The notes under the pieces are model-generated. The model had not been told where the DNA came from and ran no database searches. It was given only the letters and a program-made list of their open reading frames with translations. A DNA stretch of 61,996 nt, the filler included, from Dugesia japonica (Eukaryota): the NCBI GenBank assembly GCA_001938525.1. It is 6 parts of 6 records of this genome, joined end to end, with 100 filler letters (N's around TTAATTAATTAA, not from the genome) between each part and the next. Parts side by side here need not be neighbours in the genome. Positions count along the whole stretch, not along the records: positions 41,277 to 51,762 come from MQRL01587648.1; 5 more parts are not named here. One strand, written 5' to 3'. Positions 41,277-48,369 of the stretch are shown in pieces. The position numbers were made by a program, and so were the translations under genes. Every line of letters starts with the position of its first letter. Positions within the stretch are counted from its first letter, which is position 1.

Positions 41277-43251
41277 TTTAGTTATTTGCAATTTATTATC
41301 AAAATGGAAATTATTATTAATTAACCCCTTTACTTCATTTTAATTCTTTTTAATAACCGATGCAGAATATTTTTGAATAAAATTTTTTATGCCTCATTAT
41401 ACTTTTACAAAAGAAAAGACAAATAAGATACATGCTTACCATCGATTTGGCATACAAATGAGGTCTGCTAAAAAGGTTTCCCATAAATCACCGCATTTTA
41501 GGTGCCTTATTTTTGTCTTTTTCGTTTGTTTTCTCGGGACTTACTCAACAGATCTTATTTTGCTTGAGATCAGTACCTTCTGAATACACTCTTCATGTTT
41601 TCCAACGAACCTCTTGTTTGCATTTATTTTCCCACCAACCACCTACCTTATTTGTAACATCAATCCCTTCAGGAAGTTGACTGATCATGTTCACATGCTT
41701 GTTTTCGTCTTTTAGCTTTAGTTAAAAATTAAAATTTTTTAGCATCATGCACAAACAAACACCACTAGGATTTTAATGCATTAATTTTAGAAGCTATATG
41801 CAAAATCCTAATTTATGAAATTTTTTAAAATTTGTAGAATAATATTAAGCATCACGCAAAAACAAACATAATCACTAGGTTTTGAATATATTAATTGAAA
41901 ATTTTAATAAGAATAATATAAAAATCACAATTTTAAAATTTGTTGAATAATATTGAGCATCACACACAAACATACACCACTGGGCTATTCATATAATTAA
42001 AATTTAACAAATAAGTTATGAACAAGTTTCTTAAAAGTAAATATAATCACTTTTTATAAAACTGGCAATTATCATGCCAGTTGGACCAAGTATTTTTAAT
42101 TATACTTGGCAGTTAGATTGCCCAAAATGAGCAAAGGTTATTCTACTTTCTCACACAATGGTAATGAGTTCACGTCAATATCGATTCTGAGAGTAAAACT
42201 TAAACCATTCGTTAATATAATGAAACAACATTATTTTAAGAAATTGATTCAAATTAATTTATCGTAAAAGGCATAATAACTGTTCTAATGCCTAGAAAGA
42301 CCCAAATTGTGTGCATACATAATGAAGGCTATTGAGGGCTAATTCGAAAAAGCGAAATTATCATTTTAACAAGTTTTAGCAGTTTTCAAAAAATTGTGAA
42401 ATGTATACCCTACCACCATAATCATGGAAAATTACAGATGAATCATGCAATAAAGTTAATTCAATTGTAACTATAAAAAATTAATATCGCTGTAAAAATA
42501 AAGCTGGTTTTAATATAATTTAAAAGCCAGGTCAGTGCTGTCCACCACAATATTACCGCATTGTTTTAGTGTCTATTATGAGAAAACTAATAGATATTAA
42601 TGAAATTTAAAGCTAGCGAAAAGTTAATTCTATTTGAAAATTAATTTAGTTTATTAAGATCTTTTATGTCGATGTGAAAATGATTAGAAAATGTTTATCA
42701 TTGCCACGTTATCTGCAACCATTTTTAATCGATCCTCTATTATTATTTAGCCACATTTTCATTTGATCGTCACAAATATTGCATAATGGTGTTCACATTA
42801 GTTTTTCGTTTTCAATTAGAAATTTTACTAACTTTTCTCTATCTTCGACTAAATTTATTATTTTCTAAAAAAAAATTAATTATAATTGGATTTCAATGAT
42901 ATCAATAAGAAATTCAATAATTCAATTATATTATTTATCTATTAATTACATTAACTTTACTCAATTCTCACTAATTTTGCGGGTCAATAATTGGAAGGCA
43001 TAATATAATTATATCCCGAAATATTACGAAAATATTACTTTAGCTAAATTACTATGTGGTAACATTTTCAATCATAAATGGATTGCATAGCTCCATAAAT
43101 TTAACCAGATGAATCGTTTGTAAAAAATTATCAGTGAATATAATAATATATACATATATAATAAAAACATTAAAAATTCCTTCTCAACTAAATACTTTAT
43201 TTCTTCTAATAAACGATAATAAATCAGTAATTATTCAGAAATATTATTCGA

Positions 43252-43711
43252 TCAACATTTCTTAGCTTTGCAACAATCAGATTCTAAAATAAAATTTCAA
43301 ATGATAACTAAATTATTAAGTAAAATAACTTACTTCCAAGATTTTTTTCAATTTCAAGGTTACTTGGTTTATCATCTCCGCAGGAGATATCTTCTACACT
43401 TCGGCAACATAAAATGAAATTAATTATCATTCAAAATATTAATAAGATCTGTACCATTTTGTCCTTTAGAACATGATTCATCTTAATTATAATTTTAATG
43501 GCGAATCGTATATAATGATATTATTTCTCACTTAATTTATTGCACGACTTTAATTTANGACATTCTGGTGAACATTGAGTACATTTGCATTGACCTTCCG
43601 GACAAACACATCCAGAACCATCCAAACATCCTTTACATTTAAAATCTAGATCAAATCATAAATTGATATGAAAAAAAAGAAAAATTTTTAAAACTAACTT
43701 TTGTTTTCCAT
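43252..43711 (-). CDS. Five-exon Cys-rich metallothionein-like protein, 81 aa, 14 Cys
   Basis: Exons 43711-43699, 43645-43532, 43481-43455, 43393-43334, 43283-43252; four phase-1 GT-AG introns (53, 50, 61, 50 nt). Product MENKNFKCKGCLDGSGCVCPEGQCKCTQCSPECXKLKSCNKLNESCSKGQNEDISCGDDKPSNLEIEKNLGKSDCCKAKKC; AATAAA about 50 nt after the stop. Confidence 0.75.
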
Positions 43712-43792
43712 TAAAATAATGACACTTCGAAAAGTATTTTTTNNNNNNNNNNNNNNNNNNNNNNNNNNNNNNNNNNNNNNNNNNNNNNNNNN

Positions 43793-44160
43793 TCCGCAGG
43801 AGATATCTTCTACACTTCGGCAACATAAAATGAAATTAATTATCATTCAAAATATTAATAAGATCTGTACCATTTTGTCCTTTAGAACATGATTCATCTT
43901 AATTATAATTTTAATGGCGAATCGTATATAATGATATTATTTCTCACTTAATTTATTGCACGACTTTAATTTANNNNNNNNNNNNNNNNNNNNNNNNNNN
44001 NNNNNNNNNNNNNNNNNNNNNNNNNNNNNNNNNNNNNNNNNNNNNNNNNNNNNNNNNNNNNNNNNNNNNNNNNNNNNNNNNNNNNTGAAAAAAAAGAAAA
44101 ATTTTTAAAACTAACTTTTGTTTTCCATTAAAATAATGACACTTCGAAAAGTATTTTTTA
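43793..44160. repeat. Apparently identical partial duplicate of 43377-43742 across gaps (likely assembly artefact)
   Basis: 43793-43973 matches 43377-43557; 44086-44160 matches ~43669-43742. Confidence 0.8.
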
Positions 44161-44829
44161 TTGATTAATTCATAACATAGCAACAGAGAAGATACATATA
44201 TTGTTTCTCGTGTTACATGAAATGCCGAACTGAATATTTTTAAAGTAGAATGTAGGTCATGTAGTTTAATTCAATAAGATATTTTCATACTTAAATTGGT
44301 TTTATCAATATTTAATGAAAATATAATGTGATACTCTCAACGCGGTTTTATTTAATTTGTTACAAAAATTATGACATCCTCATAACATGGTATTCCTTTA
44401 TATTTTAAAGTTTAATCAGATTAATTGTCTTTTTATACCATAAATGTTTCTATCACTCTTTAAGTAGAAAAAAGAAATAATTCTTTTATTTATTTTGCAC
44501 ATAGATCTGAAATGTTTAACTTCAGTTATTAGTTAAACAAGAAAACGATCCCGCATTACTGTTTTTTGAATTATAATGCTTATAAATAGGTGGTACAATT
44601 AGCTTGACAATATTATGGGATTTCTTTACTCGAATAGTTTTGTTTTTCCAATTACTTTCCAAAATTACCCTTCTCGACGACATTGGAATGAACCATTTGT
44701 TTTCTATGACTTTGTTAAAGTGCTTTTTTAAGTGTGGATTTTTAAAATAACTTCTAAAAGATTAGTTCAATTCAACTTATCCATGATTTCATAATTTCAA
44801 CGTAATTTCCTTTTTATACTTCAAAGATG

Positions 44830-45380: not shown

Positions 45381-46197
45381 GGGATGCAGACGTAATTTCC
45401 CCCTGGAAATAATTTTAATGATTTGACATATGGTTTTCATGAAATTTAAGGGAATTATGAAGATTTTGTGAATTTTAATGGATAAATGTGATTTTCAACA
45501 ATTTTTAGTGGTTTTATGGGGATTTTGTTAATTTTCAGAGATTTGTGGGTATTTAACGAAAATTCAGGGTTAGTGGGAGTTTTAATGAAATTTAAGGAAT
45601 CATGGAGATTTTTATATGATTTATTGGTATTTTTCGGTAATTTTATTGAAATTGTGAGGTCTTTCTAGAATTTTTAGGGTATTATGGGTCTTCATGAAAT
45701 TTAAAGATTCATATAGATTTCATGAAATTTTTAGGGGTTTATGGGGTTTCAAAAAATTGTTGGGGCGAAACACCCGCTAAACGAGAACAAACTGAAAATT
45801 AAATCCAAGGATGATAATATCAGGACCGTATAATTACTAGTAACAGAATGTAAAGTATGGGATCAACATGGAAAGAAAAACGAAATTAAATCAAATATAA
45901 ATGGGAAATGTAAAGTAACTTACGTTTGGAAATTAAAAAAAATAAAGAAGTAATAAGAAACAACAAAGAAAAGCAGTATGGAAAATAATTAATTAGCGAA
46001 AGAAATTAATTAATTTTAAAATAAAAAAGAAACGAAATTAGTGAAAAACCTGTTTTATCAAGATAACTTCGGTCGGAGAAGGCGGAAAGAATCGGGACAA
46101 GAAAAAATAAAGGGAGAATAGTACGACGCAACTTAAATTACAAAAAAGAAAAACGTATCACCTTCCAGAAGGGTACCACAAGCCTTCCAAGATCCGG

Positions 46198-46397
46198 CCA
46201 ATAGGAAGCCTGAAAATAAAAATAAAACAAAAAATAAAAACTCACATGATAGTCCAAAAATAACGGTCAATGGAATTGCAGAAAAGTCGGCGAAACTCCA
46301 GAAAAGTGGTACCAACGCCAATAGAATCGTGCGAGTTTGAATTAAAAATATCGGGCCAATAATAATCAAGTTGGGGTGCCTCAGAAACCCTATAAAA
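46198..46397 (+). promoter_or_regulatory. Pol II promoter, four CCAAT-type boxes plus TATA
   Basis: CCAAT at 46198, TCAAT at 46267, CCAAT at 46318 and 46356, TATAAAA at 46391. Confidence 0.65.
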
Positions 46398-46901
46398 AGG
46401 ACCTCTGTCTAAGCAGAAAAATAAATATAATTTCTTAAAAAAACCCAACTGCTAACTGGTTATTAAATTGTGGATCCAATCTCAACTGACAATTCAAAGG
46501 TATTCATTAAGATAGTACTAAGTCGTTAAATAAACCGTATTTATAAAGGCAGAATTCGTTATCAGAGGAAAAAATTTGAAATTTAGTAGGAAAAAATTTT
46601 TAGTCTACGAGGACAATCAGCGCTATCAGTTATTAACCTGTTGCAGAAATTCCGTGAATCAATTATAAAAGTAAAAGATTCTTTTTTGTTATGTTGATAA
46701 TTAGTAAAATTTTATGTATAACCTATTATAATAGTTGTAATAGTTGAAATAATAGTTGCAATTAGCAAAACTAATTGCTTTAGCGATATCTGTGTAGTTA
46801 AGGGCAGCATGAAAATAGATATTATGGTTTTGCTTTTGCTCCCTCTTTTCTGTCTTCATGCAATATAATCTAAATTTATTAACTCTATTTTGTTCCTAGG
46901 T

Positions 46902-47168
46902 ATGGATTCTATCTGGATACGCGTCGTTGATAGGAGAACCCGTAGATTAGTACTACGCCGTTATCACAACCCGGATAATCGGGATGCTGGTATCTTGACA
47001 GACCGGTCAAACTTACCACCGATCGAATCAATCGTGGGCCGCATTACTGATTTCGGAGAACGACAGCGCTACCAGGCCTGGACAGGTCCGGATCGTACCA
47101 TCGCGACCCCATTTTCCTATCAACCTGCCACTCCCCCCGGCTCCGGCGATACAAGCATTCATCGCTAA
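46902..47168 (+). CDS. Cassette 1: hypothetical Arg/Pro-rich protein
   Basis: Acceptor ttcctag ends at 46899, ATG at 46902, AATAAA near 47274. Confidence 0.5.
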   Translation: MDSIWIRVVDRRTRRLVLRRYHNPDNRDAGILTDRSNLPPIESIVGRITDFGERQRYQAWTGPDRTIATPFSYQPATPPGSGDTSIHR

Positions 47169-47573
47169 CCTCCTCTGGGGAGTCCGGGATCCGAACGGGA
47201 TAACAGATATCGAAAACACTGCCCCTAACACCGACACTACTATTAATCAACCCTAATTTGTTGTTTATTTAGAAATAAATAGGTGTGTTAGCTTCGACTA
47301 TTTTTAACTGTTCTTGTGAATCAACGTACTAAGTAAATAATTCAATAATGATTTCTAATAAAAATTTCCTTGTAAAATTAAAATACTACTTATAACTAAA
47401 GAGTTCTTCTCGATTTTTATTTAATACAATGGGTAACCATATCTGTTCATTGCTTCTGGTATTAGCCCATGTTGAGTCAAGTGTAATGCTTTAACTGTGC
47501 TTTTATTTCAGTGCATTCGTCCTTAAATAGATCCCAGGCACCAAATAAGAAATTACGTGAGGATAGTGAGGAT

Positions 47574-47870
47574 ATGGCACTCACCTGGGATCTTTATAGA
47601 TTAGCCAAAAGAAGGTGGGAGGCAGAGACTGCCGTGGCAGAAGCCAAGGTAAAACGCTATAAGCGGAAATGCCTAAACTATAAAACAGAGATGGATGCCA
47701 CCCAGAATCAAGAGAGGGTGTGGAAATCGCAAGTTGAAACCTTCGCCACGATGATTAAGTCGTAACAAGAGCGTGAGAACCATCTCGTCGAGAATATAGC
47801 GAAGTTACTTGCTACGATTTCACTAGCCCCACTCTTGATTGACAAGGGCACTCAGACGTCTCGCTCCTGA
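47574..47870 (+). pseudogene. Cassette 2: coiled-coil protein with C-terminal DKGTQT (premature TAA at 47763)
   Basis: Acceptor tatttcag ends at 47511, ATG at 47574, frame continues to TGA at 47868, AATAAA near 47900. Confidence 0.5.
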
Positions 47871-48033
47871 GTTACTCTATCGTATATGTAGTTGCTAATA
47901 ATAAAATATTTTTGTTGTATCGTTTCTAATTCGTTACTTTAACGCTTAATTTGTTTGGTGACGATTTAACTATGCTTTTCATTCAGAGCCACGAATTACT
48001 TTTCCCAGCAGTATCAGGAGGTGCCATGGAATC

Positions 48034-48369
48034 ATGCGCCACTTGTTGATCGATCGACACCTAAAACGTAAAACCGATAGGGCACTTATGAAGCACCTCG
48101 ACCAACGGGATCAACTGATAAAAAAATTAGATCTCATCGTAAAAAAACAGAACGACCTTGCGATTCAAACCAAAGCTCTGGAAGCCGAGAATAAACAATT
48201 GTTGTTAAGAAAAATTGAATTCTTAAAACAATACATTGCTGATCTGTCCCGCAGAATAGTACACCTGTCGGTAACTCAATGGGATGACGATGACGACATC
48301 GCAGTCTTTAATTTCGTGGTGACAGACGGAGACCAATGGTTAGATCCTGAAGCACTGGACTTAATTTAA
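48034..48369 (+). CDS. Cassette 3: coiled-coil protein with acidic/aromatic tail
   Basis: Acceptor ttcattcag ends at 47987, ATG at 48034, 111 aa, AATAAA at 48379. Confidence 0.55.
   Translation: MRHLLIDRHLKRKTDRALMKHLDQRDQLIKKLDLIVKKQNDLAIQTKALEAENKQLLLRKIEFLKQYIADLSRRIVHLSVTQWDDDDDIAVFNFVVTDGDQWLDPEALDLI

What the first reader, a model, noticed from the sequence alone, without database searches (positions are those of the whole stretch)
43252..43711. Hidden five-exon metallothionein-like gene built from symmetric micro-exons
Seen: manual splicing on the minus strand with four canonical GT-AG introns (53/50/61/50 nt, all phase 1) gives an intact 81-aa protein with 14 Cys (CxxC, CxC, CxCxxC, terminal CCxxxxC), K/S/G-rich, almost no aromatics, no signal peptide, and a polyA signal. 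The internal exons are 114, 27 and 60 nt, all multiples of 3. An alternative in-phase donor (GT at 43363-43362) would shorten the 60-nt exon to 30 nt. Established: this composition is typical of metallothioneins. Inference: a lineage-specific metal-binding protein whose linker length and Cys number could be tuned by exon skipping. It is invisible in the ORF track and likely to be missed by annotation.
Basis: partly seen in the sequence, partly recalled or inferred. Interest (0 to 1): 0.78.

Follow-up and report, generated by a model that had tools for sequence, protein, structure and literature searches.

The report
Expressed five-exon metallothionein-like orphan gene
RNA reads confirm the hand-spliced five-exon gene exactly: it makes a small, complete mRNA for an 81-residue cysteine-rich protein that looks like a metallothionein by composition, but it has no detectable relatives and its metal binding is untested.

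Summary
On the minus strand, exons 43711-43699, 43645-43532, 43481-43455, 43393-43334 and 43283-43252 give 81 codons plus TGA. There are 14 Cys and one X, from an n at 43558 that I left unfilled. RNA from four runs shows all four GT-AG junctions at exactly these places. One 376-nt contig spans the whole mRNA to a poly(A) tail 12-21 nt after AATAAA. A cDNA adaptor marks the 5' end, and an in-frame stop lies upstream, so the ORF is complete and has no signal peptide.

The composition fits a metallothionein: 17% Cys against 2.3% background (P = 5e-9), CxC/CxxC/CC motifs, one aromatic residue, no His and 14 Lys. However, exon 2 matches no Pfam family, no solved metallothionein and nothing real among 1.84 billion protein representatives.

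No exon-skipping joint and no 43363 alternative-donor joint reaches 3% of reads. Linker length and Cys number do vary, but between alleles: a second strain carries an in-frame +9 nt in exon 4 and a Cys-to-Ser change.

An identical partial copy upstream (43793-44159, interrupted by N runs) is either assembly redundancy or a recent tandem duplicate. The organism was not identified. Verdict: a real, apparently unannotated, lineage-specific metallothionein-like gene of moderate interest.

The parts
43712..43742 (-). Assembled part of the 5' UTR. It continues into the N run.
   Evidence: RNA contigs and reads cover it (tables 2 and 8). Their loose ends run on with the letters found at 44160 onward.
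43699..43711 (-). Exon 1 coding part: ATG plus 10 nt, ending in phase 1.
   Evidence: The joint 43645|43699 is seen in all four runs.
43646..43698 (-). Intron 1, 53 nt, GT..AG.
43532..43645 (-). Exon 2, 114 nt. It carries 9 of the 14 Cys. One n at 43558 gives X.
   Evidence: Translation. Depth is about 100-116 in X22.
43482..43531 (-). Intron 2, 50 nt, GT..AG.
   Evidence: The joint 43481|43532 is seen in all four runs.
43455..43481 (-). Exon 3, 27 nt, 1 Cys.
43394..43454 (-). Intron 3, 61 nt, GT..AG.
   Evidence: The joint 43393|43455 is seen in X1 and X3. X21 and X22 use the same junction, shown as 43388|43455 with 5 allele-specific letters between.
43334..43393 (-). Exon 4, 60 nt, 1 Cys, Cys-poor linker. 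It is 69 nt in the allele of X21/X22.
   Evidence: tables 5 and 5c.
43284..43333 (-). Intron 4, 50 nt, GT..AG.
   Evidence: The joint 43283|43334 is seen in X1 and X3. X21 and X22 show the same acceptor.
43252..43283 (-). Exon 5 coding part with 3 Cys (CC-x4-C), ending in TGA.
43175..43251 (-). 3' UTR. AATAAA lies at 43201-43196 and the poly(A) sites at 43184-43175.
   Evidence: Loose ends made of T runs at 43175, 43177, 43181 and 43184 in X1 and X3 (table 7). Sequence.
43743..43792 (.). Run of 50 N between the gene and the upstream partial copy. Not filled.
43793..44159 (-). Partial copy, 100% identical where it has letters. It holds the 5' UTR, exon 1, intron 1, the end of exon 2, intron 2, exon 3, intron 3 and the first 17 nt of exon 4. 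A run of 112 N (43974-44085) stands where most of exon 2 would be.
   Evidence: the repeat finder families D1 and D3, offsets 416 and 417. Sequence.
44160..44200 (-). Unique upstream sequence that the transcripts' 5' ends continue into. The cDNA-adaptor-marked 5' end is at about 44165 and an in-frame TAA lies at 44167-44165. A TATA-like TATATG at 44200-44195 is my inference.
   Evidence: Loose ends at 43742 in X1, X3 and X21 match 44160 onward.

Best explanation
This is a real nuclear gene of an AT-rich eukaryote with short introns. It is transcribed from the minus strand, spliced at four GT-AG introns and polyadenylated, giving an mRNA of about 350 nt. The only sizeable ORF of that mRNA encodes an 81-residue protein (84 residues in a second allele).

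The protein is lysine-rich and cysteine-rich and has no signal peptide. It most likely acts in the cytosol as a metallothionein-like thiol protein. I infer that the nine Cys of exon 2 (C-x2-C-x5-C-x-C-x4-C-x-C-x2-C-x3-C-x5-C) form a metal-thiolate cluster, as nine-Cys metallothionein domains do. The sparse Cys of exons 3-5, including the terminal CC-x4-C, would add ligands across a Cys-poor linker.

Shown here: the transcript, the junctions, both mRNA ends, the strand, the complete ORF and the composition. Inferred: translation, metal binding and a physiological role in metal or redox buffering.

The length of the linker and the number of Cys differ between alleles. They do not differ through alternative splicing.
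For: All four junctions appear in RNA, with CT..AC ends on the plus strand (table 5). X3 contig 8 (376 nt) runs 43742 to 43184 across all five exons and ends in a poly(A) tail (table 8).

The stranded run X22 has about 100:1 first mates on the plus strand, which points to a minus-strand RNA (table 2). X1's 5' loose end carries an adaptor-like GGTATCAACGCAGAG plus a G run; I recognise this from memory as a template-switch oligo. It places a 5' end about 37 nt before the ATG (table 7).

An in-frame TAA lies at 44167-44165 and no in-frame upstream ATG stays open. Nineteen Logan-contig runs guessed to be RNA, from eight studies, hold 7-34% of the stretch's words; most hold 7-15%, about the exon share.

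The composition is 14 of 81 Cys against 1.9 expected (P = 5e-9), with 1 aromatic residue, 0 His and 14 Lys. The second allele keeps the frame (+9 nt) and 13 of 14 Cys. The single-sequence AlphaFold model of exon 2 has only moderate confidence (pLDDT 66.7) and no fold match in the PDB. That is compatible with a fold that depends on bound metal.
Against: There is no sequence link to any metallothionein. Exon 2 gave 0 Pfam families at E <= 1 and no solved metallothionein at E <= 10. The only hit among 1.84 billion representatives is spurious.

Cys density (17%) is at the low end for metallothioneins. The C-terminal half has only 5 Cys in 42 residues. One Cys is Ser in the other allele, and the alleles differ by about as many non-synonymous as synonymous changes, so constraint is weak.

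No MRE core (TGCRCNC) lies in the roughly 540 nt upstream that are assembled. Metal induction and translation were not tested.
Confidence: 0.5

Rival explanations
1. It is a small cytosolic cysteine-rich protein with a role other than metal buffering. Possibilities are a cross-linking structural protein of a specialised tissue, a small zinc or iron-sulfur module that acts as an adaptor, or a redox protein.
For: It has no homology to metallothionein families. Its Cys density is lower than in classical metallothioneins, and the second half is long, charged and Cys-poor. The weak best PDB matches are to the Cys-rich iron-sulfur region of FeoC, at E = 0.14, which is not significant. No MRE lies upstream.
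Against: The CxC, CxxC and CC spacing, the near absence of aromatic residues and His, and the small size are the classical metallothionein signature. No known domain of any other kind matches either.
Confidence: 0.3
2. It is a young, lineage-restricted transcript whose ORF has little or no selected function.
For: No relatives were found anywhere. The two alleles differ by 3 synonymous changes against 3 amino-acid replacements plus an indel, and one replacement removes a Cys. Divergence in the UTRs is similar to that in the coding part.
Against: The ORF is intact in both alleles and the indel is a multiple of three. Cys enrichment has P = 5e-9. All four short introns are spliced cleanly, and the mRNA is seen in many runs from at least ten studies. 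In the raw-read runs about 13-16 reads per million fall on a 350-nt mRNA, which is not a trace transcript.
Confidence: 0.15
3. The exons belong to a longer or secreted disulfide-rich protein, such as a toxin, an antimicrobial peptide or an EGF- or knottin-like module.
For: Cys-rich micro-exons of symmetric phase are common in secreted modular proteins.
Against: The mRNA is complete from a cDNA-adaptor-marked 5' end to the poly(A) tail and holds only these five exons (tables 7 and 8). An in-frame stop precedes the ATG. The N-terminus, MENKNFKCKGC, has no hydrophobic core. No joint leads to any other exon within the 853 bases laid.
Confidence: 0.05

Closest known systems
Metallothioneins in the broad, composition-defined sense, such as the nine-Cys beta-type domains of crustacean and vertebrate metallothioneins
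   Same: It is under 10 kDa and has CxC, CxxC and CC motifs. Nine Cys lie in one 32-residue block. It is rich in Lys, Ser and Gly, has almost no aromatic residues and no His, and lacks a signal peptide.
   Different: No sequence similarity was detected to any curated or solved metallothionein. Cys make up 17% rather than about 30%. The C-terminal half is Cys-poor. The gene has five exons, three of them 13-32 nt of coding sequence.
Plant-type and arbuscular-mycorrhizal-fungus metallothioneins, which have Cys-rich ends separated by a Cys-poor spacer (for example GintMT1). This comparison rests on my own knowledge and on citations in PMC4196481.
   Same: The architecture is shared: a Cys cluster, then a Cys-poor spacer, then terminal Cys. 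The overall Cys fraction is moderate.
   Different: No homology was found. The Pfam scan of exon 2, which includes Pfam's plant metallothionein families, gave no match. The C-terminal cluster has only three Cys. The organism is unknown, so no orthology can be claimed.
Dipteran MtnB-like metallothioneins, which start with an N-terminal CKGC. This is recalled from memory and is a lead, not a test.
   Same: The first Cys motif is CKGC and a CC pair lies near the C-terminus.
   Different: This protein is twice as long. The Pfam scan gave no match to any family, and the spacing elsewhere differs.

Membership tests
Metallothionein (composition-defined class) | Low molecular mass (under about 10 kDa) | tested here: met
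   81 residues, or 84 in the second allele.
Metallothionein (composition-defined class) | High Cys content arranged as CxC, CxxC and CC motifs | tested here: met
   14 of 81 residues are Cys (17%), the low end of the class. The motifs are CxxC, CxC twice, CxxC and CC. P = 5e-9 against background.
Metallothionein (composition-defined class) | Few or no aromatic residues and His | tested here: met
   1 Phe and no Trp, Tyr or His. One residue is X, a CNT codon left unfilled. The second allele has one Tyr in the inserted stretch.
Metallothionein (composition-defined class) | Binds several metal ions in metal-thiolate clusters | not testable with these tools
   This needs recombinant protein with ICP-MS, ESI-MS or spectroscopy.
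Metallothionein (composition-defined class) | Expression that responds to metal or oxidant, with metal response elements in the promoter | tested here: inconclusive
   No TGCRCNC lies in the assembled upstream 44160-44700. The single match in the window is at 42309, downstream of the gene, with 1.4 expected by chance. Many lineages do not use MTF-1/MRE. Expression under metal exposure was not examined.
Curated metallothionein sequence families (Pfam) and solved metallothioneins (PDB) | Significant sequence match to a family profile or member | tested here: not met
   The exon-2 peptide gave 0 Pfam families at E <= 1. In the PDB only FeoC-like chains matched, at E 0.14-0.23. In 1.84 billion representatives the only hit was a spurious PKD-repeat protein. 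Only exon 2 (37 of 81 residues, 9 of 14 Cys) could be searched.
Secreted disulfide-rich peptides | N-terminal signal peptide or a longer precursor | tested here: not met
   The mRNA is complete, an in-frame stop lies upstream, and the N-terminus is polar.

The most novel reading that the evidence does not exclude
This is the founding member of a metallothionein family that has not been annotated or described and is restricted to one lineage. Its metal capacity would vary within the species through allelic change (an in-frame linker indel and gain or loss of a Cys). It might also vary through tandem copy number, if the identical upstream copy is a real duplicate and not assembly redundancy.
Probability: 0.3. 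Interest if true: 0.55.

Novelty: new member of a known kind. Interest (0 to 1): 0.4.

Why it matters
Metallothioneins have arisen many times and are too short and too biased in composition for homology searches. Micro-exon genes like this one also escape ORF-based and homology-based annotation. This case shows that such a gene can be recovered from raw sequence and confirmed to the base by public RNA data.

If the protein does bind metals, it would give this organism a marker gene for metal exposure. It would also be a natural case of within-species variation in Cys number and linker length. It does not overturn anything known about metal homeostasis.

Tried and rejected
- Only exon 2 is long enough for most tools.
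- The Pfam scan first failed because exon 4 gives only 19 residues. The rerun gave nothing for exon 2.
Rerun with the natural 44-codon open frame around exon 2, it found no candidate, but it only sees proteins of 24-77 residues.
- The big HMMER search gave one hit, P0001. This is a 1709-residue PKD-repeat autotransporter that matches only through LDGSG..PEGQ repeated ten times, so I rejected it as spurious.
I did not pad the piece.
- An exact 30-mer of exon 2 was absent from metagenome contigs.
- Rfam gave nothing at the gathering score or at E <= 1, and no tRNA genes were found.
- The bacterial promoter and terminator scan was not informative.
- A Foldseek search of the PDB with the exon-2 model gave no match.
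- Attempts to name the organism failed. The neighbouring ORFs have no homologues and are not on record, and no frame in the piece has a Pfam domain above noise. GC is 28.5% and CpG observed/expected is 1.0.
- I guessed an arbuscular mycorrhizal fungus and looked up GintMT1. That gave nothing testable, so I dropped it.
- Literature searches for a metallothionein of 81 residues with 14 Cys or with five exons found only unrelated organisms, Ulva and Biomphalaria.
- I rejected the idea that the upstream copy is the second allele seen in X21/X22. The copy is 100% identical to the main copy at the sites where that allele differs.

Full report
**What is in the sequence.** I read the minus strand from 43711 and translated each exon by reference.
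- Exon 1: 43711-43699, ATG plus 10 nt.
- Exon 2: 43645-43532, 114 nt.
- Exon 3: 43481-43455, 27 nt.
- Exon 4: 43393-43334, 60 nt.
- Exon 5 coding part: 43283-43252, ending in TGA.

The introns are 53, 50, 61 and 50 nt. All are GT..AG, all are phase 1, and their GC is 14-25% against 30-33% for the exons. The four split codons read N, N, E and K.

The product has 81 residues: 14 Cys, 14 Lys, 8 Ser, 7 Gly, one Phe, and no Trp, Tyr, His or Arg. TGY triplets make up 2.3% of all triplets of the piece, so 1.9 Cys would be expected in 81 codons. Fourteen has a binomial P of 5e-9.

**RNA evidence.** One search for runs found 19 Logan-contig runs, from eight studies, that hold 7-34% of the sampled words of 42300-43752. 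Most hold 7-15%, about the share the exons make up. It also listed raw-read RNA runs with the same species label.

I laid two raw-read RNA runs (X22, X21) and two contig runs (X1, X3) on 42900-43752.
- **Junctions.** All four junctions appear exactly as predicted: 43283|43334, 43393|43455, 43481|43532 and 43645|43699. Their ends are CT..AC on the plus strand, which is GT..AG on the minus strand.
- **Whole mRNA.** X3 contig 8 (376 nt) runs 43742-43699, 43645-43532, 43481-43455, 43393-43334 and 43283-43184, and ends in a T run, which is the poly(A) tail.
- **3' end.** Poly(A) sites at 43184-43175 lie 12-21 nt after the AATAAA at 43201-43196.
- **Strand.** In the stranded run X22, first mates lie about 100:1 on the plus strand, as expected for a minus-strand RNA.
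- **5' end.** X1's 5' loose end carries GGTATCAACGCAGAG plus a G run. From memory this is a template-switch cDNA adaptor. It is attached six letters beyond 43742, so one 5' end lies about 37 nt before the ATG. X21 reads reach at least 29 nt further upstream.
- **Expression level.** In the raw-read runs, 183 of 13.6 million records and 171 of 10.5 million records fall on this 350-nt mRNA. That is moderate expression.

**Completeness of the ORF.** The letters that RNA reads carry beyond 43742 match the window at 44160 onward. In that context an in-frame TAA lies at 44167-44165. The only in-frame upstream ATG (44173) is followed by one codon and that same TAA.

No joint leads to any other exon within the stretch laid. 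The N-terminus, MENKNFKCKGC, is polar. The protein is therefore complete, short and without a signal peptide.

**Splicing variants.** Joints were listed from 3% of reads upward, and each junction had 15-62 reads per raw-read run. No exon-skipping joint appears, and no joint from the in-phase GT at 43363-43362. About 2 reads in 83 cover intron 3. The symmetric exon design is real, but these data do not show that it is used.

**A second allele.** All reads of X21 and X22 differ from the window at fixed sites and are 95-99% alike. I mapped these sites onto codons by hand.
- Three changes are synonymous (43566, 43383, 43365).
- 43556 changes K to Q.
- 43544 changes TGC to AGC, so a Cys becomes Ser.
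- The first full codon of exon 4 changes D to G.
- The last 11 nt of exon 4 are replaced by 20 nt. That is +9 nt and in frame, so KNLG becomes NYNKKSG.

That allele therefore encodes 84 residues with 13 Cys. X1 and X3 match the window exactly, so these are strain alleles and not co-expressed paralogues. Linker length and Cys number do vary, but by allele.

The frame is kept and 13 of 14 Cys are kept. Still, replacements are about as frequent as silent changes, and UTR divergence is similar to that of the coding part. Purifying selection is not strong.

**The neighbourhood and the N runs.** Segment 43377-43558 is repeated at 100% identity at 43793-43974, and 43669-43742 at 44086-44159. Between them lie N runs of 50 (43743-43792) and 112 (43974-44085). 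The 112 N stand where most of exon 2 of the upstream copy would be. I did not fill them.

The upstream copy carries the same allele as the main copy. The usual cause of identical flanks around scaffold gaps is gap-closing redundancy. The single kind of 5' loose end in the RNA fits one gene whose promoter is the unique sequence at 44160 onward. A tblastn of the exon peptides found no diverged paralogue in the piece.

**What it is like.** By composition it meets the sequence-level criteria for a metallothionein: small size, Cys motifs, and almost no aromatic residues or His. By homology it matches nothing.
- Exon 2 gave 0 Pfam families at E <= 1.
- The word search with the 44-codon open frame gave no candidate, though it sees only proteins of 24-77 residues.
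- The HMMER search of 1.84 billion representatives gave one hit. It is a bacterial PKD-repeat autotransporter that matches through a repeated LDGSG..PEGQ and is spurious.
- Among solved structures there was no metallothionein. Only the Cys-rich region of FeoC matched, at a non-significant E of 0.14.
- The single-sequence AlphaFold model of exon 2 has pLDDT 66.7 and no Foldseek match in the PDB.
- No MRE core lies in the assembled upstream region.

The absence of relatives therefore rests on exon 2 alone: 37 residues, 9 of the 14 Cys.

**Mechanism and odds.** The transcript and the gene model are certain for practical purposes. My odds for function are as follows.
- **Metallothionein-like protein, about 0.5.** The protein is translated and acts as a cytosolic metal and thiol buffer. 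The nine Cys of exon 2 would form a thiolate cluster, and the scattered C-terminal Cys would add ligands.
- **Another role for a small Cys-rich cytosolic protein, about 0.3.**
- **A young transcript without selected function, about 0.15.**
- **A secreted or longer protein, about 0.05.**

**Organism.** It was not identified. The piece has 28.5% GC and CpG observed/expected of 1.0. Its introns are about 50 nt and end in TAG or AAG rather than in a nematode-type TTTCAG. It has no tRNA or Rfam hit. The neighbouring ORFs have no homologues. Guesses from memory were not testable.

**Verdict.** The exon-skipping idea is not supported, and metal binding is untested. It is a new member of a known, polyphyletic kind, of moderate interest.

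Noticed in passing
window 43743-44159: This is a 100% identical partial copy of the gene's 5' part, from the 5' UTR to the first 17 nt of exon 4, at offsets of 416/417 nt. It is bounded by a 50-N run and interrupted by a 112-N run exactly where exon 2 would be. The single n in the main copy (43558) aligns with the last N of that run. It is either assembly redundancy or a recent tandem duplicate.
   Followed up: partly
window 43334-43393, 43544 and 43556 (reads of X21 and X22): A second allele or strain is fixed in two 2026 RNA runs. It has +9 nt in frame at the end of exon 4, the replacements D to G and K to Q, and one Cys changed to Ser. There are also UTR differences at 43225, 43245, 43721 and 43729.
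   Followed up: yes
window 41716-41976: Three tandem copies of a unit of about 107 nt, with a 46-nt core 63-100% alike, lie in the AT-rich stretch downstream of the gene.
   Followed up: no
window 46869-48369: This is a GC-richer island (37-46% against about 25% around it). It holds two plus-strand ORFs of 84 and 111 residues with coiled-coil character. Each is preceded by a CAG acceptor-like site and followed by AATAAA-like signals. They have no homologues and no exact record, and only sub-threshold coiled-coil Pfam noise. It may be an orphan gene or a transposon remnant.
   Followed up: partly
window 45440-45770: A G-rich stretch (GC skew +0.46) is built from loosely repeated ATGAAATTTAAGG and GGGATTTT motifs. 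It is followed by a very A-rich stretch at 45780-46300 (AT skew +0.44). This looks like degenerate repeat or transposon debris.
   Followed up: no
window 42900-43204: Run X1 has a 358-nt contig at a depth of 9 that covers the region downstream of the poly(A) site, against a depth of 2273 on the mRNA. So X1 holds some genomic DNA or read-through transcript.
   Followed up: no
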